DNA of 64,000 nucleotides from Macrostomum lignano (Eukaryota). The stretch's first letter is position 1. The number at the start of each line of letters is the position of its first letter. The notes beneath the pieces were generated by a model. That model was given only the letters and a program-made list of their open reading frames with translations, was not told the origin of the DNA and ran no database searches. Position numbers and translations under genes: made by a program. Positions 9,364-64,000 of this stretch are shown piece by piece. Where the stretch lies: contig NIVC01000157.1 in NCBI GenBank assembly GCA_002269645.1, positions 310,001-374,000 of the forward strand, given 5' to 3'.

Positions 9364-10116
9364 ATGCTCAGCACCTCTCCTTCGCGTCTTCTTGTCCATC
9401 TTCTTCGGGCACATCGATGCCTCCTAGTTCGATGCTGCGCCGCCACCACAGCATCGCCGACATCCGGTCACCCTCCTCCAGTCGTTCGTGTTGAAGCATC
9501 TGACGCCGCTACTGAACAGGACATCCGCAGTCATCTCAGCCTGTTCCCCCAGTTCATCTCAGAGTCGGAGGAGGCCGCCCTGATGTCGGAGCTGCAGCCG
9601 ATTCTCCGTAAATTGCGCTACGAGTCTGCACACTGGGACGACGCCATCCAAAACTACCGGGAGACGGAGCGCACCGTCTGGTCGGATGCGAATCGCGCGC
9701 TGCTTCAGCGAGTGGCCGAGACAGCCGGACTGACCGGAAAGTCCCAGCTGGAGCATGTCCATGTGCTAGACTTGGCCGAAGACGGTCACATCCGGCCGCA
9801 CGTGGATGCGGTGAGATTCTGCGGCTCCATCATAGCGGGCCTGAGCTTGCTGTCCGACTGCGTGATGCGATTCACCCTAGCAACCGCCGAGCAATCCGCT
9901 TGGGCCAAAGTGCTGCTGCCGCGTCGGTCTCTTTACGTTATGAAAGACCGGCTGCGGTACGACTACGCGCACGCTGTGCTGGGCAATGACGATGCCAATA
10001 ATTGCATTGGAAAGCAGGTTGTGAGGAAGGGCAGGCGGGTTTCCGTCATCTGTCGGTGTCAGCCTGATCCGGAGAGAGTTAAAGCTGCCGATGGTGGCCA
10101 GGATGGATCTTCGTGA
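9364..10116 (+). CDS. ALKBH7: Fe(II)/2-oxoglutarate dioxygenase ALKBH7 (mitochondrial-type N-terminus), single coding exon
   Basis: YESAHWDDAIQNYRETER, HVHVLDLAEDGHIRPHVDAVRFCGSIIAGLSLLSDCVMRF (HxD), LLPRRSLYVM, RYDYAH, RRVSVICR are ALKBH7 signatures. Confidence 0.95.
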   Translation: MLSTSPSRLLVHLLRAHRCLLVRCCAATTASPTSGHPPPVVRVEASDAATEQDIRSHLSLFPQFISESEEAALMSELQPILRKLRYESAHWDDAIQNYRETERTVWSDANRALLQRVAETAGLTGKSQLEHVHVLDLAEDGHIRPHVDAVRFCGSIIAGLSLLSDCVMRFTLATAEQSAWAKVLLPRRSLYVMKDRLRYDYAHAVLGNDDANNCIGKQVVRKGRRVSVICRCQPDPERVKAADGGQDGSS

Positions 10117-25830: not shown

Positions 25831-28100
25831 TCAGCCTCCTGGTTGGTGTCGTAGGCGCGTATGGCAGACTTAGCAGAGCAGTTGATGGCGCAGTCAGCTT
25901 TGTTGAAGTGGAGACGGTTGACCACCTTGTAGTGCTTGATGAAGATCTCAGCCTTACTTGCATTGTTGCAGTAGGTTTTGTCTCTGATGGACAGGGCCTC
26001 ATTAGTGGCGTTATCGCCCGGGGTACCACCAAGGCTGCGGACAAGGTGCCAGGCCTTGGTGGCATCTTGGAATAGGTCGGTGTCGCACAGGAATTCCCGC
26101 CAGCTCTATTCCTTGCTCTTGCAGGAGAGTGTAGTGGCGTCTGCACAGGCTTGGAGCCATTTGGCACGGCGGTTACCGACGTCTTTGCTGAGGCAATTGC
26201 GCTTGCGGATGGCCTCGCAAGCCTCCTGGGAGAGCCAGGGCCGGGCTGGACGTTTGGAGGACTTTTTCCCCACATGGCAGTATGCCGATGCTATGATGGC
26301 CTCCGTGAGGTGGCTGGCTCGTTGTTTGAATGAGACGCCGGTGCTTTTGAAGGTGGCGACTTGGGAGTCGACGTCCTGGGCAAATGCTGTCCAGTCTACC
26401 CCGGTGCTTCTCTAGAAAGTCCTGGTCTGACAATGGAGATTCTTGGTGGTGCAGCGGAGGTAGATGGCGATTGGGAGGTGGTCGGAGCTGAGGTCGTCGA
26501 GGGTACTCCAAGAGGTGCAGTGATGCCAAGCGTTGCGGCAAAGCGATACATCTGGCATGCTCTCGCCACCTGTACCGCGGTTAATTCTGGTTGGTGAGCC
26601 GTTATTCATGACCATCAAGCCATGTTCAGTGGCCCAGTCCAGCAGGGTGTTGCCACAACCATTGGCCAGTTGGGTCTGGTCCCAGATGGCCGAGTGGGCA
26701 TTGAAGTTGCCGGCGAGCAGGTTGGCATTTGTTGGGAGGGTTGACCAGAATACCTCGCTGTGTTCTTTGCCGCCATAGACAGGCAGGACGTATACATTAT
26801 CCACGTCCAGGGATTTCTTAGAGCTTAGGAAGATACGTACGCGGCAGGTTTCGATTGGCTCGCAGGTCGTCACCAGCTTGCGTTCGAATGCGAGACAGTC
26901 CCGGATGAATGTGAGCAGCCCACCTCCACCGTCCAGCTGCTTGCGGTCTACCCGAACTGCGGCGTAACCATGGAGGCAAGGGGTGGGGTCCTGCAGGAGC
27001 AGTTTGGACTCCTGGATCAGAATCAGGTCTGGTTTGAGAGAGTTGATGCAGTTTGCCAGCTCGGTGACCCAGGTTGAGATGCTGTCCGCATTCCACTGAA
27101 GAATCAGCAGGGGTTCCTGGAAGGTTGTGGTGCAGAGGCAGGCGCACTGGGTGGAAGTCTGGGCCTGAGTTGTGGTCTGGTTAGTGACTGCCGTCTCGTG
27201 TGCCACTTTTGTTGAGGTGCAGGCCAGGCAGGTCCAGTGACCCTGGGTGGCAGCCAGGTTGGCCGCAAGCCTAGTAAGACGGGTACATTTCTTGTGGAAC
27301 TTAGCATTACACTGACGGCAGGCGATGGGGTGGTGGTTAGAGCGGAAGAGAAAGTAGCACCCGCTGCAGCAGCCGGAGTCTTGAATCGGCGGGTGGGGGT
27401 GACTGGCAGCCGCGGGGCGCCTATCCACGATCGGGCGGCCAGCCAGGGATCTCACCGCAGGTGGGGTGTAGATGGGGCAGCGCCAGCGAGGGCAGCCCTT
27501 GAAGCGCGGGATGCTGCTGCATTTGGTTGTATGGTGGCAGGTTGACGTGCAGCCGGCGGTTTCACACCGTAGCGGAGTGGTGCCAGAGTGGATTGGGCCC
27601 AAGCAGGCACTGCAGTTGCCAGGGGTAGCTGCCTCCGCGGTTGGCGAGTTGCAGGGGGTGCGCTCTGATCTGCTGTAATGTTGGCAGTGCAAGCGTTGGT
27701 TCTGTTGGTATCAGCAGATGCCGCTGCAAGATGGTTGCTTGTGGCAGCGGGTGGGGCACTAACTGGACTGGCAGGAGAGGAAGTTCAAGCCTCTTCTGAT
27801 GGGGCAACCGCAGCAGTTGCAGTCGGGCCCAGGGTTTAGTTCAATGTCGCCTGCAAGCTGGGCGAGCAAACTGAGCCAGAAAAAGAGGCTGATGACAATG
27901 ATGACATGTCTAGACACTGGGAAGTGATCATCGCCTTGCGCCGCAGTTGTGATGTAGTCGTGTACCGGAGGAGGCGGTTGTCTAGGGTTGGGCATCTTGG
28001 CACAGTCGTAGCTGTCCAACCATCCGGGTCGCCAGGTAGAGGCGATGCCCATGACCGCGGCCATGGTGCTATTGTGCTGCTGCTGCTGGTGCTGGTGCTG
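25830..28100 (-). mobile_element. Decayed non-LTR retrotransposon (I-group/Ingi-like by inference): hydrophobic leader, 2A motif, 3 PHD-like fingers, APE endonuclease; truncated before RT
   Basis: GDIELNPGP at 27851-27825. C/H-rich fingers follow. APE motifs: LQWNADSI, DLILIQESKL, GGGLLTFIRD, GNFNAHSAIW, NNGSPTR, SDHLPI. In-frame stops (27759-27761 and one more) and later frameshifts; no RT motifs before the element breaks at ~25830. Confidence 0.88.
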
Positions 28101-43800: not shown

Positions 43801-46800
43801 TTTAGCTTGCATCTAATAATAATATTTAATTTGAGATACAATTTTGAATTGAAAGTTAGAAAAATACTAGGATAGGGCTATTTATTAATATATAAAATAG
43901 CATTCCTATTGCAAAAAATACTAAGTAAATTACTGAAATTCCTTAGTCACTAAGTATAGTGTCTAAGTAATAGGATTCTATGATTTTATATCTCCTTATA
44001 AAAGTTTAGAGTGTTAGGCCTACCAATTGATAAAAGTTACATATTAGGCCCTATGTGTTGTAGGGAATCCTTCCTTCTTAATAAGATCCCACCGCTGAGA
44101 CAAAAGCTGTTGCAGGGCTCTGTCTCTCTATAAAAGATTCCCTCTGCTAAGTCACCAAAACTGTCGCAGGGGCAGTGCCCAGGATGGCGCGAATTTGTGC
44201 CAGGCGCGAATTTTGAGTAAAGTGGCGCAAAAATGCGCGAGTTTTTCTGCTGTGGCGCAAATTTTTTCTAAACTGAGTGGCGCAAATTTTTTGCAACTGA
44301 GTGTTCTTTTGACATTGGTTCTCTCGAAGTAGAGGGCTCAACTGCATCAACCGCCAAAATTGATCCACAGCCATGTCGATGGCAAATCTGACAAGTTTCC
44401 GAGCAAGTGGGGGACAAGTGCCCTTAACTTTCCTAATGGAAGTGCAGAAGTTGAGCGCGTCTTTAGTACTTTGAGTGACACGGTCACAAAGAAACGCTCA
44501 GTTTTAAAACCGGAAACAGTCAGGGCATTGGTTGGTGTTTGCCTGCTCAACCAACAGGTTAGAGCAGTTGCCATAGAAAGGCAAGACCATGGTCGGGCAA
44601 GTTTTTAACACATCCTTATCAGAAGCAAAACTCGGTTTGTTCATCATTTTATTAGAGATAAATCTATTGATTTCACTACAAATGATATTCTTGGGAAATT
44701 GATTCATTCTCAGAATTTTGGTGAGATTGTTAACTTCAATGTTGAAATTGGTCCAAGAGCTGCAAACCGTGTAGGCCCTGTGCAACAAACAACGAATCAG
44801 GCCAACTTTCCACTGTCTGGGACACACAGCTCCAAAATTAAGCATCAAGTTCATGAAAGTGGGCTTGCGGTAAACTTTAGTGGAAACCGAATTACTGTGG
44901 ATGTCAACGTCAACATCAAGGAAAGGGAGTTTCTTGTCACCAACTTCAACCGTGAACTGGATGTTTTTGTGAGTGGAGTTCAGAGCAGCAAGAAACTCTT
45001 CATGATCCGATCCCCCTTTGAAAATGGCAAAGGTGTCATCAATGTAACACTTGTAGAATCTAGGAGCACATTGCAGGGTCATCCACTCTTTCTCCAAATG
45101 AGTCATACAAATGTTGGCAAGAGTGGGCGCAAGGGGGCTACCCATCGCGCAGCCATCAGTTTGGCGGTAGTACTTATCATTAAAAAGGAACAGACCAGAG
45201 GTGGCAAAGTTCATAAGTTTTTTTAAAGTACTTTTTGGGAATTTTGGAGGGGCATGCTCATAGACATAGTCAGCGGCCAGATTAATAGCAAACTGCAGAG
45301 GAACATTTGTGAACAGAGAGGTCACATCAAAGCTACAAATGTAGTCATTGTTAGTTGGGGTAACCTCTTTCAGATGGTTCATAAAGTCAGTGGTCGAGTT
45401 GATGGAATGGTCACGTGGGATGGTGGGCTTGATCAGGTGATCAAGAAATTTGGCTAATTGGTACTCAGCAGTATTAATCATGGAAACAATAGGTTTAAGA
45501 GGTTTGTTCGGTTTGTGAATTTTACAGACACCATAAAGTTGACCAGGCTGACTGCTATTTGGCATGATGCGTTTGAAAGTTTCGTCTTCAATGTGTTGTT
45601 TCACATGGTTGCGCAAAAAACTCTGCAGGGATCTCTCAGCTTTCAGAACAGGATGCGCAGTGGAAACTTCAGTTATTGCTCCCAGACAGTGGAATTTGGA
45701 TTGGTCTTGAACAATCTCGTTCATTTTCATGTTGTAATCATTTTCCCGCAACGCTATTGCTAGCAAGAAAAATAGGCTTACTCACAAGACTATGAAAGGC
45801 CTTAGGGAGAACAAAGAGATAAAAATTGTTAGCTATGATAAAGGATATGGCATTGCCATCATGGACACCAATGATTACAACATGAAAATGAACGAGATTG
45901 TTCAAGACCAATCCAAATTCCACTGTCTGGGAGCAATAACTGAAGTAGTCTAATATAAATTAGACTTTATATGACTTCTTTATACTATGGCCTGGGTTGC
46001 ATTTGTTTTTGTGCAAAGGTATCCTATCCTTCAGTTGTATATGACCCATGGTTAAGCAAAGGTATAATTGGCTTTGGCTTAAGCATTTGCAAATAGTTTC
46101 AACCAATCTTCCTAGTTTTACTGGCTTTGTATTTTGTTGTTTACCCTTTTACTAATTGGTTGCAGCTAGCTTTGCCCTTTTAGCTATGTTGTCATGCCAA
46201 TGATTTGCTAGGCCAGGTTGCTGCTATTTTTAGGTCTTCAGAGGATGACTCTGTAATCTGTTTGGCTTACTAGCTATAGAGACAGTGTCTTACTGCAAAG
46301 TATGCATTTATTGCCATACAGGGCACTTGGGTAAAAAAATATCAAGAAGGTCCACTACTTTGCAATGGTCCTGAGTATAAACTATGATTGCCTATCATAC
46401 AACTATTTAAGTAGGAAATTTTGCCAGAAATATCCCATCTTGAGCCAAGATCCATGTGGGGGGGGGAAATGCTAACTAGCAGAGTTACCAATGACTAAAG
46501 GATAGGGTTTTCCTTACACTCCTAACATCTGAATTTTTTACCTGAATTTTTGTGTGAAATTTTTTTACATTTTATATGAATTTTATAACAAAATAAATCA
46601 ATTCCATTTCCCTAATGTTTGCTAAACCATCAATTGAAATTTTATCTAAAAAACAAGTTAAACAAACTTAAAATGTATAAAGATCTGATATTATTGTTGA
46701 TCAGGCTGAATGACACTGTCATTTAACTACATAATTAAGCTACATTCATGCACCAATCTCATTGAAATTCTCAGAGAAAGAAGGCAAAGCATTTCACCTG

Positions 46801-52800: not shown

Positions 52801-55657
52801 ATAGGGTAGATTAGATAAGAGTAGGTAGGTACATTTTAGAGTTTAGATAAGTAGATAGGAGAGTAGATTATAGGGTAGATGAGTAGATAGTGGAGTTAGG
52901 ATGGATGAGTAGATGGGACAAGTAGACTAGAGGATAGATTTAGCGAGTTGAGTGGAGTTAAATAAAAGAGGGAGAGGAGATTAGAGCGAGAGAGAGTGTG
53001 TGTATCAATCAGGGAGAGATGAGTTGCTCTGATTTTAAGCAAGCGTTTTTATTATTTTATAACTTTCACAAGTTAATTTTTTAACTTTAAATAGTTTCTT
53101 TAATCTCTTACATTTGATTTAACAAATATTCGATATTTGGTCTTGCAATGATGGCAATTATTTAGCTGGATAATCTGAAAGCTCATTAATTAGACACAGC
53201 CGGTACTTGGTAATACCCTTTAATCCTTTAATTGTTAATATTTATAATTTGTTACACAGACATATTTAATCATGTTGAATTATTGCAAACTGCAGAGAAT
53301 GTGGCAACTCAGTTGACAATGTGTGTTGTGTGTCCCTGTGTTTTGTATCGGTTAAATTCTTAGTTAATACTACTACTCACCAGCTCTTGTAAGTAGTGCA
53401 AACCGGGCATGTCTATGGTTTATTTTTTTCAGGTTCGCGTGCCAACTCACGAGGAGGGCTCGTGCATAGTGTGGGAGTTCGCCACCGACCATTACGACAT
53501 CGGGTTCGGCGTGTACTTCGAGTGGACCGTCTCGCCCTCTGACCGCGTCACCGTGCACATCAGCGAGAGCTCAGATGAGGAGGAGGAAGAGGAGGCCAAC
53601 GAGGATGGCAATAATGAGGCTGGCGAGGCTGAGCATCAAAAGCTTGACGGAGGTGGGTCGGAGTTGGCATCTATGGGTATTTGTTAAAATTATTCGGGTG
53701 ACCTACTTTGCTTTTTGAATGATCCAAGCAAACCGATTTCAATTTGTCCTGTTCGAGTCATGCTTGACCCATCTAAGTCATGCTTGACCCATCTGAGTCC
53801 TGCTTGACCTATCTAAGTCATGCTTGACCCATCTGAGTCCTGCTTGACCCATCTGAGTCCTGCTTGACCCATCTGAGTCCTACTTGACCCATCTGAGTCC
53901 TACTTGACCCATCTGAGTCCTGCTTGACCCATCTGAGTCCTGCTTGACCCATCTGAGTCCTGCTTGACCCATATTTGTCCTGCTTGACCCATCTAAGTCA
54001 TGCTTGACCCATCTGAGTCATGCTTGACCCATCTGAATCCTGCTTGACCCATCTAAGTCATGCTTGACCCATCTGAGTTAGCTTGACCCATCTGAGTCCT
54101 GCTTGACCCATCTGAGTCCTGCTTGACCCATCTGAGTCCTGCTTGACCCATCTGAGTCCTGCTTGACCCATCTGAGTCCTGCTTGACCCATCTGAGTCCT
54201 GCTTGACCCATCTGAGTCCTGCTTGACCCATCTGAGTCCTGCTTGACCCATCTGAGTCCTGCTTGACCCATCTGAGTCCTGCTTGACCCATCTGAGTCCT
54301 GCTTGACCCATCTGAGTCCTGCTTGACCCATCTGAGTCCTGCTTGACCCATCTGAGTCCTGCTTGACCCATCTGAGTCCTGCTTGACCCATCTGAGTCCT
54401 GCTTGACCCATCTGAGTCCTGCTTGACCCATATTTGTCCTGCTTGACCCATCTAAGTCATGCTTGACCCATCTGAGTCATGCTTGACCCATCTGAATCCT
54501 GCTTGACCCATCTAAGTCATGCTTGACCCATCTGAGTTAGCTTGACCCATCTGAGTCCTGCTTGACCCATCTGAGTCCTGCTTGACCCATCTGAGTCCTG
54601 CTTGACCCATCTGAGTCCTGCTTGACCCATCTGAGTCCTGCTTGACCCATATGAGTCCTGCTTGACCCATCTGAGTCCTGCTTGACCCATATGAGTCCTG
54701 CTTGACCCATCTGAGTCCTGCTTGACCCATCTGAGTCCTGCTTGACCCATCTGAGTCCTGCTTGACCCATATGAGTCCTGCTTGACCCATCTGAGTCATG
54801 CTTGACCCATCTGAGTCCTGCTTGACCCATATTAGTCCTGCTTGACCCATCTAAGTCATGCTTGACCCATCTGAGTCATGCTTGACCCATCTGAATCCTT
54901 CTTGACCCATCTGAGTCATGCTTGACCCATCTGAATCCTGCTTGACCCATCTGAGTCATGCTTGACCCATCTGAATCCTGCTTGACCTATCTGAATCCTT
55001 CTTGACCCATCTGAGTTAGCTTGACCCATCTGAGTCCTGCTTGACCCATATTTAGTCCTGCTTGACCCATCTGAGTCATGCTTGACCCATCTGAATCCTG
55101 CTTGACCCATATGAGTCCTGCTTGACCCATATTAGTCCTGCTTGACCCATCTGAATCCTGCTTGACCCATCTGAATCCTGCTTGACCAATCTGAATCCTG
55201 CTTGACCCATATTAGTCCTGCTTGACCCATCTGAGTCCTGCTTGACCCATCTGAATCCTGCTTGACCCATCTGAATCCTGCTTGACCAATCTGAATCCTG
55301 CTTGACCCATATTAGTCCTGCTTGACCCATCTGAGTCCTGCTTGACCCATCTGAATCCTGCTTGACCCATCTGAGTCCTGCTTGACCCATCTGAGTCCTG
55401 CTTGACCCATCTGAGTCCTGCTTGACCCATCTCCAGATTCCAAACCCGCTGATGGAGCGGCATCAAAGCGGCGACGTCCTGACGATGACAAGGCGGTTGA
55501 CGAGATCATCCCGGTGTTCCGGCGCGACTGCCACGAGGAGGTGTACTGCGGCAGCCACCAGTACCCCGGCAGAGGTGTGTACCTGCTGAAATTTGACAAT
55601 TCCTACTCGCTTTGGCGATCCAAGTGGCTGTACTATCGAGTGTACTACACAAAGTAG
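40865..55657 (+). CDS. ACBD3: Golgi acyl-CoA-binding protein ACBD3 (ACB, coiled-coil/Q-rich, GOLD). Exons 40865-40934, 46775-46916, 47014-47178, 48366-48527, 49247-49518, [50817-50995 OR 52186-52415], 53433-53652, 55437-55657
   Basis: [13 protein letters not shown]|[30 protein letters not shown]; [20 protein letters not shown]; SMW..|[31 protein letters not shown]; [35 protein letters not shown]. All junction phases are consistent (1431 nt with exon A, 1482 nt with exon B). The start Met is inferred. Confidence 0.93.
41662..42542. mobile_element. hAT-type MITE (881 bp) in ACBD3 intron 1
   Basis: 15-bp TIR CAGTGTTGGGCACCA / TGGTGCCCAACACTG; perfect 8-bp TSD TTTATATA (41654-41661, 42543-42550). 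Confidence 0.93.
42895..43430 (-). mobile_element. Tc1/mariner (IS630-type) transposase N-terminal fragment
   Basis: [54 protein letters not shown] is a paired HTH with GRPR linker (ATG at 43197). No DDE domain. Possible degenerate TIR near 43405-43430. Confidence 0.75.
43579..43807. repeat. ~230-bp direct repeat, copy A (copy A' at 45956-46185)
   Basis: Near-identical, with about 3 differences by eye; the two copies flank the Penelope/hAT block. Confidence 0.9.
43810..44056. repeat. Diverged copy of 41160-41393
   Basis: Shared blocks such as ttagtcactaagtatagtgtctaagta and gtgttaggcctaccaattgataaa. Confidence 0.8.
44173..44550 (+). mobile_element. Internally deleted hAT fragment (subterminal repeats and C-terminal dimerisation motif)
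   Basis: Starts CAGTGCCCAGG with tggcgcaaa/ggcgcgaa repeats. [34 protein letters not shown] matches the hATC motif. Confidence 0.75.
44540..45946 (-). mobile_element. Penelope-like retroelement RT fragment with inverted 5' segment (45770-45946, + strand)
   Basis: [67 protein letters not shown] are PLE RT motifs. The plus-strand piece encodes [23 protein letters not shown] possible 3' remnant lies at 44070-44160. Confidence 0.9.
47200..48270. repeat. 21-bp minisatellite (GAGATTGATAGATTGGAGTGY)n, ACBD3 intron
   Basis: Period 21, about 50 units. Confidence 0.97.
48841..49020 (-). mobile_element. SINE copy 2 (internally deleted), ACBD3 intron
   Basis: Shares agatgtgcaaccgacagctcagccgcagc, accctcaattaccccagctaatgctgg and the tRNA-like head (GGTTCGAATCCC) with 13542-13810, but lacks most of the CORE segment. 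Confidence 0.8.
49570..50580. repeat. 45-bp minisatellite (ATCAGGGATCTGTAGTTTAGTGATCTGGGACTCTGGAGTRTTGGG)n, ACBD3 intron
   Basis: Period 45; shorter subunits at the 5' side. Confidence 0.95.
51030..51660. repeat. 12-bp (AGTTTAGTCCCG) and 27-bp (AGTCCCGATCATTGCAGATCCCTAAGR) arrays between the two alternative ACBD3 exons
   Basis: Periods 12 and 27 seen directly. Confidence 0.93.
52440..52950. repeat. Degenerate purine-rich AGTAGAT repeat, ACBD3 intron
   Basis: Recurring gagtagat(t/a) units. Confidence 0.75.
53755..55432. repeat. 20-bp minisatellite (TGCTTGACCCATCTGAGTCC)n filling the last ACBD3 intron
   Basis: Period 20, about 83 units; runs directly into the ctccag acceptor at 55436. Confidence 0.97.
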
Positions 55658-56889: not shown

Positions 56890-57690
56890 AGACCGGGGTG
56901 CCCAATAAGAGACAGGGGCGCCCACCAAAAGACAGGGGGCGCCCACCAAGAAACAGGGGCGCCCACCAAGAGACAGAGACGCCCACCAAGAGACAGGGGC
57001 CCCACCAAGAGACAGGGGCCCCACCAAGACGCCCACCAAGAGACAGGGGTGCCCACCAAGAGACAGGGATGCCCACCAAGAGACAGGGGTGCCCACCAAG
57101 AGACAGGGGTGCCCACCAAGAGACAGGGGTGCCCACCAAGAGACAGGGGTGCCCACCAAGAGACAGGGGTGCCCACCAAGAGACAGGGGCGCCCACCAAG
57201 AGACAGGGGTGCCCACCAAGAGACAGGGGTGCCCACCAAGAGACAGGGGTGCCCACCAAGAGACAGGGGTGCCCACCAAGAGACAGGGGAGCCCACCAAG
57301 AGACAGGGGCCCCACCAAGAGACAGGGGCCCCACCAAGACGCCCACCAAGAGACAGGGGTGCCCACCAAGAGACAGGGGCGCCCACCAAGAGACAGGGGT
57401 GCCCACCAAGAGACAGGGGTGCCCACCAAGAGACAGGGGTGCCCACCAAGAGACAGGGGTGCCCACCAAGAGACAGGGGCGCCCACCAAGAGACAGGGGT
57501 GCCCACCAAGAGACAGGGGTGCCCACCAAGAGACAGGGGTGCCCACCAAGAGACAGGGGTGCCCACCAAGAGACAGGGAGCCCCACCAGGACGCCCACCA
57601 AGAGACAGAGGCGGCCACCAGGACGCCTACCAAGAGACAGGGGCGGCCACCAGGACGCCTACCAAGAGACAGGGGCACCCACGAAAAGCA
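56890..57690. repeat. 20-bp minisatellite (CCACCAAGAGACAGGGGTGC)n, the reverse complement of the 35-39 kb array family
   Basis: The unit is the reverse complement of ggtgggc(g/a)cccctgtctctt. Confidence 0.95.
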
Positions 57691-58203
57691 CTGAGCGTGC
57701 AAGTGCATGGCGCATTGTGCAGTCCACGCCAGGCGTATATTTGCAATTTTGTCTACTCTAGCGGTATTTGATCCTTTGAGGTCTGCAATCGTAACGAAGG
57801 GTTTAAGCAACCAGACTCTTAAAACGCGTACTCGTAATTCCACTGCTAAGTACTATTGCTGCTGCGTGGCGAGGGTATAGATTAGCTGGTGTTACAGTGT
57901 AGGTTGTTTTTACTTTGGTTTAAGTTATAAGAGCAACGTGCGCATCGAAAGCTCCTCGGGGTTTGGTCGCCTGTCTTTGGTGCGCTCGCTCTGTCTGGAA
58001 GGACTGTGGCTGTTTTGTCACGCTTGGTTGCTTTCCACTGTTTATTATTCCATTTATTAGCTGTATCATTCTTCTTGCGCCCCTTTATAATGCTGCAATT
58101 AGTTAAAATCTGGCCCGGCTTGGCGCTCCCTGGCTTGTGTGGCAATAAAGTCTGCAGCCACTACATTGCTAGCTCGTACTATCGTGATACGAAAGGCCCA
58201 CGG

Positions 58204-61200
58204 ATGATCAACGATACACCGTCTACTGAGCATCCGGCTGCAGCTTGGGCAGGTGAAAACATTGAACAAATTCTTGACATAATTTACCTGGCTAAGAGCT
58301 CAGCAGACCAGCAAGAGATACCAGCTGATGAATTGCGCAAAATTCAAGAGCGCGAGCTTCGGCCCATGTGGCTCGACCAAACCGATAATCCATTGTCCAA
58401 CATGGCTAGAAATGCAGTTGCTGGGGACAATGCAGACTTGGACCGCACGCTGGCGTACCTGACCGACCAACAGACGAGTCTGTTGCTGCGCCATTGTATC
58501 TTGCTTGGTCACCTGGCTTTGGCGCTTACCCTGCTGACTCGCGTGTCCGATGTCGACTGGAAGATAAGCAGCGACGAAACAGCACTCATGCTGGCTGCCG
58601 GCGCGGGACACCACGAGCTCGTCACGGCACTTCTCCATCGTGGCGCCTCAGTGGAAGCTGAGGACAGCGAGGGTTGGACCGCCCTGTCCAGGGCGTGTCG
58701 TGCCGGCCAGCTCAGAGTCATCAGGCTGCTGCTGGATGGAGGATCCGACGCGGATCACTTGGACCGGCTGGGCCGCTCATGTCTGCAGCTGGCCGAGCAG
58801 TGCGGACACGAGCGACAGGTGCTGCGGCTGCTTTCGAAACGGAGTGCTGAGCAAGATGTTAGCACCGCGTCAGCCACTCCGGATGGCCAATCGATTGGCT
58901 CTCCGGTTGACAAGTAATGCCACATGTACATGTACATGTCCATGAGACGTTTTTCATGAACTCTGAGTGAATGTACGAGTAGGCGCCTTGCTGCTGTAAC
59001 GCACTGAAACGAATTCATTGTCAATTAACGCCATCAAATCTTACATTTCTAGCCAATCGCTTGATGAAGAGCAAAGTCTGGAGTTGCACCAGTGGCTCAA
59101 CAGTGCCGGGTTCACTTCTGAGCGAGCCCAATGTCTGCAGCGATTTGCAGACTTTATTCAACAAATGGCACGTGGAATGCTTCCAGAAAATTGGACAATG
59201 ACAGGCAGTTATGCAGATGGCTGGGCCAACAGTCTGATTCAGGTTAACGGCAGGACGGGGGCAGATTCCGACATTGACTGGACAATCATAATGCCCCAAG
59301 TGTTTCATCTGGCAGGCGGCTGCCACTGCGAGGAACTGCAAGGAAACAAGCGACTTCAAGTAGTTCAAGGTCACGCTCAAGTGGAGGTCGGAACAGGTGA
59401 TCAACCTCTCTCTGATCGTGATGTTGCCCTTTAAATCAGACAAAGGACGTATAAGTTATTTCCGTTTCTTCCCTTCTTTGGCCCGAATTCCTCGGCTGAG
59501 AGCTCGTTTCTTGGCCGAGGCGCAGCCGAGGCCTAGAAGCGAGCTCTCAGCCGGGGACTTTGGGCCATGGACAGAAAGAAACGGAAAGAATATATTTCTT
59601 CCAAACTTAAATGGACCGGGCCAAAGAAATGAAAACAGCATTGAACCATAGACAGGCACGGCCCAGCCAAGTGGGGAAGAAGCCAAGTGGACCGTATCTT
59701 CTTGGCCGTATGCATAAAGCACTGTCTATGGTAATCCAGACTTGAAAAACTATCTTAGTCTGGATTTGGATTTGGTATGCAGAAACACGAAGTTAGACCG
59801 ATCTATGACTATAGGCTTTATACATCCCGCCCAAAAACTGCCTTCCTGCCGTCGCAGTCAGCAGGGCTAGCCATAGACTATGGCCATAAGCAGTGGCGGA
59901 TCTAAAATTTCATTTTGGGGGGTCCAAGTTTGGGGTGCCAACGTGAGTTTGAATTGAAGGGCGCCAATTTTTAAGCATAGGGGGCGCAAAAATGCGTGTA
60001 GGGGGCGAAAAATCAAGTTTAAAGGGCGTAAACTTCTCAAGGTTTTAGGGGGGCGCAATATGTTTATGTTCTGTCAAACTATTTTTTTTGGGGGGGGGTG
60101 GGGGCGGCCGACCAAAATACACCCCTGGCCATAATCCTCTAGTCGGGGACAGCTCGACTGATCACGACCTTTGTACCTCATCAGTGTGCCATCCTATGTA
60201 CTAAAAATGAAAATCTAATATAATAAAAATCATGAACTATATAATTCAGTATCTCCCACTGTATTCAGGAAACCAGCCAGCTGTGGCGGCGGCGGCCTGC
60301 GGAATGAGGCCAGCCCAGGACACCTGCTATGCCTTTGATTGCTGCAGCGGCTACTGTAAACAGGCGCTGATGGATTTGCAGGAAATCACTCGAGAAGACA
60401 GGGACTGTGTCCACCTTGTTAAAGCGACAAGACCGAACGCATCTAACGAGCTCAGAGTGAGCTTCAGCTTTGAAGAAAAGAAAATTCTACGTAAGATGAA
60501 CTCCGTTCAGGGCCAGCTGTTTACTCTGTTAAAGTTCACGTTCAAGCGGTACCTGCCGGGGAATCTGGACACACCTGGACTCAAGACCTACAATGCGAAG
60601 ACAATCATGTTCTTCATGCTGAAGCGGCACCACAGAGAAGAGGAAGCTGAGTGGCAGCCGAAGAATCTCATCAAGCTGCTCAAAGAATCGCTCGACATGA
60701 TGCTGAGCTTCATCGAATCGAACAGCTCACCTGACGAGTGCATGCCTCACTTTTTCATGCCCGACGCGCCGCTCTACTTCAAGAATGCTGGACTTGGCGG
60801 CGACTTAGACAACACTAAGTCAATGGTTCGAGACCGATTGAGGCAGGTGAGAAGCAGCACCGAGGACTTGTTTCAAGCTCTCCAGAAACTCATGCAACCA
60901 CTGCAGTCGAAGAGCTTTTATTTCCATCCATTCACTCTGCTCCCGTTGACTCAACCTTCAATTAAAAGAAAGATACACATCAGTGGTGGCTATCCACACT
61001 ATGCGGATGTGTACGGTGTTATATGCTACTGTGTTAAGAAATTGCATTCGAAGAGTTGCGACAAGGAGGACCTCTTGAGCCAACTCAAACTGCTCGAGAG
61101 CCTGCCTTGGTGCAAGTCCGCTGTTATCTGCCTGACTGCCATGGCCCACCTGAAATTCAAGGATATTACTTGTGCTGTCCAACTGATGAAGGAGCTCATT

Positions 61201-61764
61201 AGTCACAAAGTAATGAACGGACTCAAAATCGAGCACTGTGGACGGAGAAGCAATTGCACAAAGTTTTTTCTTCGCTGCCAGTCTCACGGCTTGGACTGGG
61301 CGTGGAGGTTCTGCTTACCATGGACTGCAGTGCCCGAGTTCCCTTTCCTGCCTGAGTTCACGAGTTCCCTGCTCACCGCCAGGATAGAGCACCCTCGCTC
61401 GTCTCACCTGTACCTGAACTTCCGCTGCCTGAGCTGGAGTCTGCAAGCTGAGCTGCTGGACAGGGGGTTGACTGACACTGCCTCGTGGATGCCAGAGCTG
61501 CAGGACGACCCGGACTTGGAGGAGCTGCTCACTCTGGCTCACTACAGCGACAGTAGAGAGCAGGTGGAGTTCAGTCTACGCCAAATGGAAATGGTCCGAG
61601 ACGAAAGACGCGTTGCCATGGAGAAGCAGGACTATGAGAAGATTGAAACGGTCAAAAATAAGTTAAAAAGCTTGACTGGCGACGAGAAGAATTCACCTGC
61701 TTGGAGCGCGACAAGCCAGAACAGCTCACAAGCTAGACCTGTGCGCTGTTGCTTTTGCTGTTGA
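58204..61764 (+). CDS. Ankyrin-repeat + Mab-21/cGAS-like nucleotidyltransferase (cGLR-like), ~849 aa, exons 58204-58913, 59053-59396, 60269-61764
   Basis: ANK repeats: ETALMLAAGAGHHELVTALL, GWTALSRACRAGQLRVIRLLL. NTase motif TGSYADG..DSDIDW with candidate third Asp in QDTCYAFDC. Mab-21 C-lobe: LRVSFSFEEKKIL..LLKF..LKTYNAKTIMFF..W..MPHFFMPDAPLY. Phase-2 junction (58914/59052) and phase-1 junction (59397/60268) both join in frame. AATAAA at ~61767. Confidence 0.85.
59891..60127. mobile_element. hAT-type MITE in intron 2 of the ANK-Mab21 gene
   Basis: Ends CAGTGGCGGATCT / ATACACCCCTG; flanks GCCATAAG and GCCATAAT (7/8 TSD match). Confidence 0.75.
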
Positions 61765-61796
61765 TAAATAAAACTCCGGATTTTTACTGAAGGTGA

Positions 61797-62480
61797 AGAA
61801 TGAAGAGTAACTGCAATTAATTATCTGTTTGTATTGCGTTTGTAAAATCCAATTATTGCAGGGAAAGAATGAAGAGTAACTGCAATTAATTATCTGTTTG
61901 TATAGCGTTTGTAAAATCCAATTATTGCAGGGAAAGAATGAAGAGTAACTGCAATTAATTATCTGTTTGTATTGCGTTTGTAAAATCCAATTATTGCAGG
62001 GAAAGAATGAAGAGTAACTGCAATTAATTATCTGTTTGTATAGCGTTTGTAAAATCCAATTATTGCAGGGAAAGAATGAAGAGTAACAGCAATTAATTAT
62101 CTGTTTGTATTGCGTTTGTAAAATCCAATTATTGCAGGGAAAGAATGAAGAGTAACTGCAATTAATTATCTGTTTGTATTGCGTTTGTAAAATCCAATTA
62201 TTGCAGGGAAAGAATGAAGAGTAACTGCAATTAATTATCTGTTTGTATAGCGTTTGTAAAATCCAATTATTGCAGGGAAAGAATGAAGAGTAACTGCAAT
62301 TAATTATCTGTTTGTATTGCGTTTGTAAAATCCAATTATTGCAGGGAAAGAATGAAGAGTAACTGCAATTAATTATCTGTTTGTATAGCGTTTGTAAAAT
62401 CCAATTATTGCAGGGAAAGAATGAAGAGTAACTGCAATTAATTATCTGTTTGTATAGCGTTTGTAAAATCCAATTATTGC
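61797..62480. repeat. 69-bp tandem array, 10 near-identical copies
   Basis: Units start at 61801, 61870, ... 62422; one main variable site (tattgcg/tatagcg). Confidence 0.97.
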
Positions 62481-62736
62481 ATAATCAAACGTCACATTGT
62501 GTAGAGTAAGAGAGCCTCGTATAGCTATTTAAATTTTATGCCTAGCTATTGAAATTTATACTCGTATTTTTAAATAAAACATGATTATTTTGGAATAAAA
62601 TATTTTTTCAAACTAATAACTAATAACTAATAACCAACTAATTGGCTTGTGCTTTTTAAGTAGTTAAATTTTGAGTCCCAAAATCAATAGGAATAGCCTC
62701 GCTAGCCTCGCTAGTTTGGTAGCCGCATTTGGCGAA

Positions 62737-64000
62737 TCATTTGCCTTGACAACTGGCTAGAAAATGCTCAAGCGAGTCGTCTATCGCTTTCATAAAAGGC
62801 TGGCCCGGTGGCGGGGCCTGCTGCCCTGAGAACTTGCTGCCAAACTGCCGGTCCTTGTAGGTGGTGATGTCCTCGGCTCGGTGGTCCTCCCACTCGTAAA
62901 ATATCTTTGATACGTCCAGGTCGTAGCCGTAGTTGGACTGGTTCGCTAGGTCAACAACGAAGTCGGTTTGGAAGGCGATGTTCTCTTGGTCTGTCTTCGA
63001 CAGTGCCGCTCTGAAGTGTGCGAATGAGACTTATCAAGCCATGCACAAGTACGCACCAAAGTACGCACAAGTATGCACAAATAAGCAACATATATTCGCT
63101 CTCGTATAGGACCCGACATGCACTTTTCATGTGAAAAAGTTTTGAAGGCCACTTTAGATAAATATTTTGCTGGATGCTGCCGCTTTGGAATTAACATTTA
63201 TTTATATTTTTTACAGATTTTACACGGCTAATCCAACCCTTCCAAGAGTTACAAATGCAGTTTATGGCAGGTAAATTATTTTAGAAAGGAAGGCATACCT
63301 TGTTGAAAAAAATGGGTTGCCTTTAAGAAAAGTGAAATTAAAAAAATTAAGTTAAACAAAAGCCGCGAATGCTATTGATCTTATAGGGGAATAAATTTCA
63401 AAGATTCTAGCGAAAAAAATAGATTTCCACGTGCATCCATTCAAAAGTGACATTGTGTGGAAAATTGGCCTTCAAAACATTTTCCATCGATTTCGAGTTT
63501 TGCGTCCTTCTACTTTAGTAGTCCTTGATGCACAAGTTCGCAGGCACACACTCATACAGAGTGCACAGTGGCTCTTTTTAACTTTCTCAAAACCCAGGCT
63601 TGGAAGCGATCACGCATCCACTCACCGATTAACCCAGGCCTTCGCATCCGCTGCCATCTCGGCAGAACTTGGCAGCTGGATGGCGCCAGTCAGGTAACGA
63701 ACTGTCCACAGAGCCTGCGCATCGAACATTGTGTAGGTGTAGTACTGGTCCTGAGCACCCAAATACAGCAGACGGTTGTTGCCGCCGGCAAGCCACACGG
63801 TGCCTTTGTACAGCCCGGCAGGGTACAGAAGGTTCGGACCGCGAAGTCGCAGTTGCTCGGCCAGGTAGGGGTAGTGGTGCAGATAGCCCGTGGCCAGAAT
63901 GATGTAGTCGATCTGAGTTTTGGAAAATATTTTTGTCTATTAAAACTGAGATGCAGGTCACTTCATGCGGGGCGATAACAGGACTGTCTGCTAGCTCACT
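62737..64000 (-). CDS. Bacterial-type (Tmm/mFMO-like) flavin-containing monooxygenase, 3' part: exons 63912-63626 and 63010-62737; upstream exon begins at the window edge
   Basis: Not in the ORF track frame. IDYIILATGYLHHYPYL..LRLRGPNLLYPAGLYKGTVW..LLYLGAQDQYYTYTMFDAQALW..LPSSAEMAADAKAW | ..AFQTDFVVDL..FYEWEDHRAEDITTYKDRQF..KAIDDSLEHFL parallels the C-terminal half of marine bacterial trimethylamine monooxygenase. GTGAG donors at 63999 and 63625; phase-2 junction 63625/63011. Confidence 0.88.

What the first reader, a model, noticed from the sequence alone, without database searches (positions are those of the whole stretch)
58204..61764. Spliced ankyrin + cGAS-like (Mab-21) nucleotidyltransferase: candidate innate immune sensor
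Seen: three separate ORFs in the track join by phase-matched introns into one ~849-aa protein (ANK repeats, NTase core GS..DSDID plus a candidate third Asp, Mab-21 helical lobe, ~250-aa helical C-terminal extension). Established: animal cGAS-like receptors (cGLRs) make cyclic di-nucleotide second messengers, and some invertebrate members carry accessory domains. Inference: the intact catalytic acidic residues suggest an active enzyme rather than a developmental MAB21L1/2 orthologue, with the ankyrins as a ligand or regulatory module. My unverified recollection is that cGLR/STING signalling is reported scarce or absent in flatworms; if this genome is a flatworm, this would be an uncharacterised nucleotide-signalling system.
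Basis: partly seen in the sequence, partly recalled or inferred. Interest (0 to 1): 0.75.

Follow-up and report, generated by a model that had tools for sequence, protein, structure and literature searches.

The report
Flatworm ankyrin-fused cGAS-like enzyme gene
This is a real three-exon gene of the flatworm Macrostomum lignano encoding ankyrin repeats fused to a cGAS-like enzyme; it belongs to a very large gene family that a 2023 survey had already listed as cGAS-like receptors, and its product, trigger and receptor are still unknown.

Summary
Exons 58204-58913, 59053-59396 and 60269-61764 (+) join through GT-AG introns into an 849-aa protein. Residues 204-849 are identical to GenBank PAA89289.1 (BOX15_Mlig012347g1, Macrostomum lignano), an RNA-seq-derived model. 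Near-identical copies carry the ankyrin exon on the same mRNA.

The protein has about four ankyrin repeats, a cGAS/Mab-21 nucleotidyltransferase core and a conserved helical tail of about 250 aa.
- G288-S289, D310, D312 and D369 align with the catalytic residues of Mab-21 proteins (hhalign 99.9%, E 5e-31). They are kept in 24-28 of 28 diverse paralogues.
- A pLDDT-89 model of the core matches cGAS and MAB21L1 (Foldseek E about 5e-9).
- Pfam alone is borderline.

The family is a Macrostomum expansion: 89 clusters at 50% identity score E<=1e-30.

It is not new as a kind. Li et al. 2023 listed M. lignano ankyrin-cGLRs and cloned five, two of them 56-58% identical to this gene. None is among their 15 characterised active enzymes.

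Enzyme activity, ligand, immune role and downstream receptor are inferred only. Whether M. lignano has STING could not be tested here.

Verdict: a new member of a known kind, of moderate interest.

The parts
58204..58913 (+). The intron after it is phase 2.
   Evidence: The GT donor is at 58914.
58090..58203 (+). Possible 38-codon N-terminal extension (MLQLVKIWPGL...) starting from an upstream in-frame ATG. The true start is unresolved.
   Evidence: The copy PAA81764.1 (889 aa) is annotated from the equivalent ATG. An in-frame stop lies further upstream.
58495..58869 (+). About four ankyrin repeats (residues 98-222).
   Evidence: Pfam Ank_2 E 1.6e-20 and Ank E 7.6e-15. PDB ankyrin and DARPin matches reach E 6e-52.
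58914..59052 (+). Intron 1 (139 nt, GT-AG).
   Evidence: The junction is reproduced in three GenBank proteins.
59053..59396 (+). Exon 2: the N-terminal spine helices and the first half of the nucleotidyltransferase core.
59204..59209 (+). Codons for G288-S289, the nucleotidyltransferase GS motif (sequence context MTGS).
   Evidence: G in 28 of 28 and S in 27 of 28 diverse family members. Aligned to the GS of Mab-21 proteins.
59270..59278 (+). Codons for D310-I311-D312, the first two catalytic acidic residues ([DE]h[DE]h).
   Evidence: D310 is D in 27 of 28 and E in one; D312 is D in 25 of 28. Aligned to the nearly invariant D.D of the Mab-21 protein set.
59397..60268 (+). Intron 2 (872 nt, GT-AG). 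It contains a hairpin with 71-nt arms at 59451-59595.
   Evidence: The junction is reproduced in the GenBank proteins.
60269..61764 (+). Exon 3: the rest of the core, the Mab-21 C-terminal helical lobe, the family-specific C-terminal extension, and the TGA stop.
60319..60321 (+). Codon for D369, the third catalytic Asp candidate.
   Evidence: D in 24 of 28 family members. Aligned to an invariant D of the Mab-21 protein set. It lies 54 residues after the DIDW motif.
60571..60774 (+). Mab-21 HhH/H2TH-like helical lobe (residues 453-520).
   Evidence: Pfam PF20266 E 5.9e-5, 23.6 bits against a cut-off of 24.1. The family profile hits cGAS, cGLR1 and MAB21L1 here at E 0.017-0.07.
60985..61761 (+). 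Family-specific C-terminal extension (residues about 591-849). It is mostly helical, has no known domain, and ends in CCFCC.
   Evidence: It is conserved in paralogues, with 53% mean identity over residues 591-800. There is no Pfam hit. Foldseek gives only weak helical-repeat matches.
61767..61772 (+). AATAAA polyadenylation signal three bases after the stop codon.

Best explanation
The window carries the Macrostomum lignano gene BOX15_Mlig012347g1. It has three exons and encodes an 849-aa protein, or 887 aa if the upstream ATG is used. The protein has about four ankyrin repeats, a cGAS-like receptor (cGLR, Mab-21 superfamily) nucleotidyltransferase domain with a complete active-site signature (MTGS, 20 residues, D310-I-D312-W, 54 residues, Q-D369-T), and a family-specific helical C-terminal extension of about 250 aa. 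It is one member of a very large expansion of ankyrin-cGLR genes in this species.

Shown here:
- the gene structure;
- transcript-based annotation support;
- family membership by sequence profile and by predicted fold;
- conservation of the catalytic residues;
- the size of the expansion.

Inferred:
- like characterised cGLRs, the enzyme is held inactive until a ligand or partner engages it, most plausibly through the ankyrin repeats or the C-terminal extension;
- it then uses two NTPs to make a cyclic or linear oligonucleotide second messenger that switches on a downstream effector;
- the size and divergence of the family point to a defence or recognition role.

The product, the ligand and the receptor are unknown.
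For: Gene model: GT-AG junctions in phase. Residues 204-849 are identical to PAA89289.1. The ankyrin exon is joined in the near-identical copies PAA81764.1 and PAA82405.1. The annotation is RNA-seq derived.

Constraint: both copies are intact, with dN/dS 0.37 from 9 synonymous and 12 non-synonymous differences.

Family:
- The profile of 15 paralogues hits 515 proteins at E<=1e-3.
- Ten of ten sampled distant hits carry Pfam Mab-21 plus Mab-21_C.
- hhalign of the family against those proteins gives 99.9%, E 5e-31 over 280 columns, and aligns GS, the two Asp and the third Asp.
- The distant set resembles the bivalve cGLRs in Table S3 of Li et al..

Fold: the AlphaFold2 core model has pLDDT 89 and pTM 0.91. 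Foldseek finds 167 PDB hits at E<=1e-3. The top 50 are all cGAS or MAB21L1, with probability 1.00 and TM 0.45-0.56. The weaker full-length model's only real hit was oyster Cv-cGLR1.

Active site: G288 in 28 of 28, S289 in 27, D310 in 27 (plus one E), D312 in 25 and D369 in 24 of 28.

Expansion: 89 clusters at 50% identity score E<=1e-30. All nine sampled are M. lignano.

Prior classification: Li et al. 2023 cloned PAA68676.1 and PAA93208.1, which are 58% and 56% identical to this protein, as cGLR representatives, and list M. lignano accessions with Ank_2 domains.
Against: Pfam alone does not pass. There is no PF03281 hit, and PF20266 scores 23.6 bits against a cut-off of 24.1.

Direct sequence similarity of the family profile to solved cGAS, cGLR1 and MAB21L1 is weak (E 0.017-0.07).

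TM-scores of about 0.5 show the shared fold but not a close superposition. I could not inspect coordinates to check the geometry of the three Asp residues.

Foldseek ranks MAB21L1, which has no known enzymatic activity, alongside cGAS.

The residues flanking D369 (Q and T) are not hydrophobic as the published motif asks.

None of the five M. lignano constructs screened by Li et al. is among the 15 active enzymes they characterised. The species is not mentioned in their main text.

No expression, infection or ligand data were available.

Whether M. lignano has STING is unknown.
Confidence: 0.6

Rival explanations
1. The protein is a catalytically silent Mab-21-type scaffold, a pseudo-enzyme. 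It would have the cGAS fold and ankyrin repeats and act by protein-protein interaction, for example as an adaptor or a developmental factor. It would make no nucleotide signal.
For: MAB21L1 is among the top Foldseek hits. According to Li et al., MAB21L1 also keeps a complete putative active site without known activity. The five M. lignano constructs screened are not among the reported active enzymes. A minority of paralogues have lost D312 or D369.
Against: GS, D310, D312 and D369 are kept in 24-28 of 28 members that are only 23-65% identical. That conservation is hard to explain without catalysis. The screened constructs #92 and #93 begin just before the nucleotidyltransferase domain and so lack the ankyrin repeats, and the screen used only pooled nucleic-acid ligands. 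A negative screen is therefore weak evidence. The protein is not close in sequence to MAB21L1 (E 0.07).
Confidence: 0.25
2. The protein is an active nucleotidyltransferase with a different chemistry. It might make linear 2'-5' or 3'-5' oligonucleotides like OAS, or add nucleotides to an RNA or protein substrate. It would not make a cyclic dinucleotide for a STING-type receptor.
For: STING is reported absent from the flatworms examined so far. Some cGLRs in the Li et al. screen make products that match no known standard. Nothing in the sequence fixes the product.
Against: The nearest structural and profile relatives are cGAS and cGLRs, not OAS or terminal transferases. No OAS appears in the top 50 Foldseek hits, and there is no OAS Pfam hit.
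Confidence: 0.12
3. The ankyrin exon belongs to a separate upstream gene, and the join is an artefact of gene prediction.
For: The annotated model for this exact locus is 5'-partial and starts inside exon 1. M. lignano transcription units can hold several trans-spliced genes.
Against: The partial model still starts within the ankyrin exon and crosses junction 1. Two near-identical copies have full models with the ankyrin repeats and the nucleotidyltransferase together. Most paralogues listed carry ankyrin Pfam domains in the same protein as the cGLR domain. Li et al. list ankyrin-cGLR as a recurrent architecture.
Confidence: 0.03

Closest known systems
Macrostomum lignano cGLR representatives PAA68676.1 (BOX15_Mlig016402g1) and PAA93208.1 (BOX15_Mlig001946g3), numbers 93 and 92 in Table S3 of Li et al. 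2023 (PMC9980059)
   Same: Same species and same subfamily. They are 58% and 56% identical over about 400 aa. They share the GSYAEGW...DSDIDW...RPAQD motifs and the C-terminal extension. PAA68676.1 also has N-terminal ankyrin repeats.
   Different: They are different paralogues. The window protein has fewer ankyrin repeats and a CCFCC end. The screened constructs start just before the nucleotidyltransferase domain. No activity is reported for them in the main text.
Bivalve cGLRs, for example Crassostrea virginica Cv-cGLR1 (PDB 8gjw) and entries 82 and 83 of Table S3 in Li et al.
   Same: They have a Mab-21 core and helical lobe with the same catalytic layout. They are the closest non-flatworm relatives by profile. 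Cv-cGLR1 was the top hit of the first structure model. They also belong to a large lineage-specific expansion.
   Different: Identity is only about 21-23% over the helical lobe. Most bivalve cGLRs have no ankyrin repeats. Bivalves have STING genes (Table S5), whereas the STING status of M. lignano is unknown.
Vertebrate cGAS
   Same: Same fold (Foldseek E about 5e-9, probability 1.00, TM 0.50-0.56). Same GS, [DE]h[DE]h and [DE] active-site pattern.
   Different: Identity is 12-17%. The flatworm protein shows no similarity to the disordered basic N-terminus of cGAS. It has an N-terminal ankyrin module and a C-terminal extension of about 250 aa. Its ligand and product are unknown.
Human MAB21L1 (PDB 5eog, 5eom)
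   Same: Same fold at similar Foldseek scores (E about 1e-8, TM about 0.46).
   Different: MAB21L1 is a conserved single-domain developmental protein of about 360 aa. The window gene is a fast-diverging, multi-domain member of a family of about 90 clusters. Profile similarity to MAB21L1 is E 0.07.
Ankyrin-fused cGLRs of the coral Stylophora pistillata (Li et al. 2023, Fig. 4C)
   Same: Same domain idea: a cGLR core fused to ankyrin repeats.
   Different: They come from a different phylum. I did not compare the sequences, and it is unknown whether the fusion arose independently. No function is assigned to the coral proteins either.

Membership tests
cGAS-like receptors (cGLR), criteria of Li et al. 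2023 | Active-site motif h[QT]GS, X8-20, [DE]h[DE]h, X50-90, h[DE]h | tested here: met
   The protein has M-T-G288-S289, then 20 residues, then D310-I-D312-W. The conserved third acid, D369, lies 54 residues further on, but in a Q-D-T context; its flanks are hydrophobic in many divergent paralogues. The strict pattern is also matched through F-D375-C, but D375 is not conserved. The motif is therefore met with a small deviation at the flanks of D369.
cGAS-like receptors (cGLR), criteria of Li et al. 2023 | [quoted passage not shown] | tested here: met
   hhalign of the family profile against 23 proteins that carry Pfam Mab-21 plus Mab-21_C gives 99.9%, E 5e-31. It covers 280 columns spanning model residues about 241-546.
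cGAS-like receptors (cGLR), criteria of Li et al. 2023 | Predicted structural homology to known cGLR or CD-NTase enzymes | tested here: met
   The AlphaFold2 core model has pLDDT 89 and pTM 0.91. Foldseek finds 167 PDB hits at E<=1e-3. The top hits are cGAS, at E 5e-9 and TM 0.50-0.56 over about 350-400 columns. Residue-level superposition of the three Asp was not possible because no coordinates are returned.
cGAS-like receptors (cGLR), criteria of Li et al. 2023 | Synthesis of a nucleotide second messenger, normally dependent on ligand | not testable with these tools
   This needs biochemistry. From the literature only: paralogues at 56-58% identity were in the Li et al. screen but are not among the 15 active enzymes characterised.
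Pfam Mab-21 (PF03281) and Mab-21_C (PF20266) | Score above Pfam's gathering threshold | tested here: not met
   There is no PF03281 hit at E<=1. PF20266 scores 23.6 bits against a cut-off of 24.1. Several paralogues do carry a precomputed PF20266 hit.
MAB21L1/MAB21L2 developmental orthologues | Single-domain protein of about 360 aa, highly conserved across bilaterians, low copy number | tested here: not met
   The protein is 849 aa with ankyrin repeats and a C-terminal extension. The family profile scores E 0.07 against MAB21L1. There are 89 clusters at E<=1e-30 in one species. No formal phylogeny was built.
cGAS-STING pathway | A STING (PF15009) receptor encoded in the same genome | tested here: inconclusive
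   Word-indexed searches with human and Ptychodera STING listed only deuterostome proteins among the 120 hits shown. This cannot exclude a divergent flatworm STING. The literature reports loss in Schistosoma and Schmidtea. Nothing was found for M. lignano.
2'-5'-oligoadenylate synthetases (OAS) | OAS-type core and OAS1_C domain | tested here: not met
   There is no OAS Pfam hit, and no OAS structure appears among the top 50 Foldseek hits.

The most novel reading that the evidence does not exclude
Macrostomum lignano belongs to a phylum otherwise reported to have lost cGAS, cGLRs and STING. It may have built its own large repertoire of about 90 or more divergent ankyrin-cGLR sensors. These sensors would need the ankyrin module or the family-specific C-terminal extension for activation, which would explain why constructs #92 and #93, which lack the ankyrin repeats, were not among the reported active enzymes. 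They would signal through a receptor other than canonical STING. That would be a nucleotide second-messenger immune pathway with both a new input and a new output.
Probability: 0.2. Interest if true: 0.7.

Novelty: new member of a known kind. Interest (0 to 1): 0.38.

Why it matters
cGLRs are now seen as a major family of animal pattern-recognition receptors. For most of them the ligand, the product and the receptor are unknown.

Flatworms are usually cited as a phylum that lost this pathway. This gene documents that the early-branching, laboratory-tractable flatworm M. lignano instead has a very large ankyrin-fused cGLR family with intact catalytic residues. Transgenesis and RNAi are available in this animal.

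If these enzymes are active, M. lignano would be a convenient system for two questions. One is what accessory domains do in cGLR sensing. The other is whether cGLR signalling can run without canonical STING.

For annotation, the result is practical. The gene and its paralogues, now labelled 'hypothetical protein', can be labelled as ankyrin repeat-containing cGAS-like receptor family proteins.

Tried and rejected
1. A Pfam scan of the full protein found the ankyrin repeats clearly. Mab-21_C fell just below threshold and there was no Mab-21 N-domain hit. Pfam alone therefore cannot decide.

2. A single-sequence search against PDB sequences was swamped by ankyrin hits. The family profile against PDB sequences gave only E 0.017-0.07 to cGAS, cGLR1 and MAB21L1.

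3. The first AlphaFold model covered 612 aa with 15 sequences and had pLDDT 69, with a poorly modelled core. Foldseek gave one real hit, Cv-cGLR1 at E 8.5e-3, plus weak helical-repeat noise for the C-terminal extension. It was replaced by a model of the core only, built on a more diverse alignment.

4. STING in M. lignano. Searches with human STING residues 139-343 and with a Ptychodera STING returned only deuterostome proteins in the listed top 120. Table S5 of Li et al. does not list M. lignano. Paper searches found nothing. The question stays open.

5. I checked whether this exact gene is in the Li et al. tables. The accessions PAA89289, PAA81764 and PAA82405 were not found, but Tables S1 and S2 are held only in truncated form.

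6. The idea that the ankyrin exon is a separate gene was rejected.

7. The idea that the gene is a pseudogene was rejected. The ORF is intact in two copies and dN/dS is 0.37, although this rests on only 21 differences.

8. A scan of neighbouring ORFs for functional partners found only retroelement ORFs, an AlkB-like oxygenase and an FMO-like gene. Nothing there is evidently linked to the cGLR gene.
Full report
**What is in the sequence.** Three + strand ORFs lie at 58006-58917, 59018-59434 and 60232-61764. Joining 58204-58913, 59053-59396 and 60269-61764 gives an uninterrupted reading frame of 2550 nt. Both introns have canonical GT-AG ends, and their phases are 2 and 1. The product is 849 aa. 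An AATAAA sits at 61767-61772, three bases after the TGA stop.

**Origin and check of the gene model.** A homology search with residues 237-849 returned only Macrostomum lignano proteins plus one metagenome fragment. The window is therefore from this free-living flatworm.

- GenBank PAA89289.1 (BOX15_Mlig012347g1, partial, 646 aa) is an exact substring of the model, residues 204-849. It starts inside the ankyrin exon, crosses both junctions and ends at the same stop.
- Two near-identical copies, PAA82405.1 (753 aa) and PAA81764.1 (889 aa), have the same junctions with the complete ankyrin exon.
- The GenBank annotation of this assembly was made from an RNA-seq, genome-guided transcriptome with mapped trans-splice and poly(A) sites (PMC5730564). 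These models therefore count as transcript evidence.
- The locus of the 889-aa copy is colinear with window 55-64 kb at 92-98% identity.
- The two coding sequences differ by 9 synonymous and 12 non-synonymous changes and one in-frame 6-nt indel, giving dN/dS 0.37. This is weak evidence, but it is consistent with both copies being functional.

The start codon is unresolved. PAA81764.1 begins at an in-frame ATG 38 codons upstream, which is 58090 in the window. PAA82405.1 begins at the equivalent of 58204.

**Domains.** Ankyrin repeats at residues 98-222 are unambiguous (Pfam Ank_2 E 1.6e-20; PDB ankyrins to E 6e-52). The rest of the protein is harder to place from sequence alone.

- Pfam gives only Mab-21_C at 23.6 bits, against a cut-off of 24.1, and no Mab-21 N-domain hit.
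- A profile of 15 paralogues reaches solved cGAS, Drosophila cGLR1 and MAB21L1 at only E 0.017-0.07, all over the helical lobe.

Deeper methods settle the question.

- The same profile was searched without a word index against 1.8 billion representative proteins. It found 515 proteins at E<=1e-3.
- Ten of ten sampled distant hits carry both Pfam Mab-21 and Mab-21_C above threshold.
- These distant hits resemble the bivalve cGLRs listed by Li et al. at 26-34% identity, with E down to 7e-50.
- hhalign of the family against 23 such proteins gives 99.9% probability, E 5e-31 over 280 columns. G288-S289 aligns with their GS, D310 and D312 with their nearly invariant D.D, and D369 with an invariant Asp.
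- An AlphaFold2 model of residues 238-588, built on 28 diverse family members, has pLDDT 89 and pTM 0.91.
- Foldseek against the PDB gives 167 hits at E<=1e-3. The top 50 are all cGAS or MAB21L1, with E from 5e-9, probability 1.00 and TM 0.45-0.56 over essentially the whole domain.
- In the model, GS follows the first strand, D310 and D312 open the next long strand, and D369 lies in a later strand. This is the expected layout for this fold, based on established knowledge of cGAS. I could not examine coordinates, so the geometry of the triad is not verified.

**Conservation of the active site.** I compared 28 members that are only 23-65% identical to the window protein.

| Residue | Conservation |
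|---|---|
| G288 | 28 of 28 |
| S289 | 27 S, 1 T |
| D310 | 27 D, 1 E |
| D312 | 25 D |
| D369 | 24 D |
| D375 | not conserved |

The published cGLR motif h[QT]GS, X8-20, [DE]h[DE]h, X50-90, h[DE]h is matched as MTGS, X20, DIDW, X54, Q-D-T. The only deviation is the polar flanks around D369 in this subfamily.

**The family.** 89 clusters at 50% identity score E<=1e-30 against the family profile, and 123 score E<=1e-10. All nine sampled members are from M. lignano. Most listed paralogues have ankyrin repeats N-terminal to the cGLR domain, and some have two cGLR domains.

Mean identity of paralogues to the window protein varies by region:

| Region | Mean identity |
|---|---|
| First 95 residues | 26% |
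| Ankyrin repeats | 50% |
| Nucleotidyltransferase core | 54% |
| Helical lobe | 64% |
| C-terminal extension | 53% |

The extension, about residues 591-849, has no Pfam match and no convincing structural match.

**What was already known.**
- Li et al. 2023 (PMC9980059) curated 3,020 animal cGLRs using the three criteria tested above. [quoted passage not shown] They also note ankyrin- and TPR-fused cGLRs as minor architectures.
- Their Table S3 lists five M. lignano proteins cloned for the biochemical screen. Two of them, PAA68676.1 and PAA93208.1, are 58% and 56% identical to the window protein over about 400 aa.
- Their Table S2 lists M. lignano accessions with Ank_2 domains.
- Constructs #92 and #93 begin just before the nucleotidyltransferase domain and therefore lack the ankyrin repeats.
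- None of the five is among the 15 active enzymes analysed, and the species does not appear in the main text.
- Other papers report loss of cGAS and STING in Schistosoma (PMC4117786) and failure to find either in the planarian Schmidtea (PMC13563047).
- M. lignano is reported to keep other antiviral genes: at least six Mx proteins (PMC11789081) and RIG-I-like receptors (PMC8476169).

**How it most likely works.** It is shown that this is an intact, transcript-supported gene for an ankyrin-cGLR fusion with a conserved catalytic signature, inside a large species-level expansion.

The mechanism is inferred by analogy with characterised cGLRs. A ligand or partner, probably read by the ankyrin repeats or the C-terminal extension, releases or organises the active site. 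Two NTPs are then joined into a nucleotide second messenger, which activates a downstream effector.

My confidence differs by step:
- about 0.9 that it is a cGLR-family gene with a fused ankyrin module;
- about 0.5 that it is catalytically active;
- about 0.4-0.45 that it acts in defence.

The main rival is a silent Mab-21-type scaffold. A second rival is an active enzyme with different chemistry. A separate ankyrin gene is essentially excluded.

**STING.** I could not test for a STING gene in M. lignano. Searches with human and hemichordate STING reached only deuterostomes among the hits listed, and no paper addresses the point. This is the main open question bearing on novelty.

**Verdict.** The gene is a new, unnamed member of a kind that is already catalogued, and it is not a new kind of system. 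Interest is moderate. It lies in the size of the flatworm expansion, in the untested role of the ankyrin and C-terminal modules, and in the possibility of cGLR signalling without canonical STING.

Noticed in passing
window 61796-62481: A 69-bp unit is repeated 9.9 times at 98% match, directly downstream of the gene's poly(A) signal. The near-identical copy of the locus (L001) lacks most of this array, so the two copies differ in repeat number.
   Followed up: partly
window 55001-55432 and 56890-57682: Two 20-bp minisatellites of about 22 and 35 copies lie just upstream of the gene. The second produces the long ORFs of 200-350 aa on both strands at 56.8-57.8 kb. These ORFs are repeat artefacts and not genes.
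   Followed up: partly
window 59451-59595 (inside intron 2): A near-perfect hairpin with 71-nt arms, 79% complementary, with 3 nt between the arms. It is possibly a small inverted-repeat transposon. Intron 2 aligns along almost its whole length with the near-identical copy of the locus.
   Followed up: no
window about 62405-63941, minus strand: This stretch is colinear at 96-97% with the region of L001 that carries the 3' end of a gene for a 463-aa FMO-like flavin monooxygenase. The next gene downstream therefore converges on the cGLR gene.
   Followed up: partly
window 26412-27692 (-), 44504-45766 (-), 9364-10116 (+): There are retroelement ORFs: an endonuclease/exonuclease/phosphatase domain at 26.4-27.7 kb and a reverse transcriptase at 44.5-45.8 kb. 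An ORF at 9.4-10.1 kb has a 2OG-Fe(II) oxygenase (AlkB-like) domain.
   Followed up: no
window 61747-61761 (last five codons, CCFCC); paralogues P0009, P0013: The protein ends in a cysteine cluster, CCFCC. One paralogue ends in a CaaX-like CCIA and another has a strongly hydrophobic C-terminal tail, while most have neither. Some family members may be tethered to membranes by lipid or by a tail anchor. This recalls the prenylated OAS1 isoform, which I cite from my own knowledge and did not test.
   Followed up: partly
proteins P0003, P0033, P0040 (M. lignano paralogues): Some annotated family members contain two cGLR domains in one protein. These are either true tandem-domain proteins, as in OAS2 and OAS3, or fused models of neighbouring genes.
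   Followed up: no
protein P0025 (JGI metagenome contig, 3.2 kb): The only hit of the first homology search not labelled M. lignano is a 467-aa protein, 47% identical, from an environmental metagenome. It presumably comes from a related flatworm.
   Followed up: no
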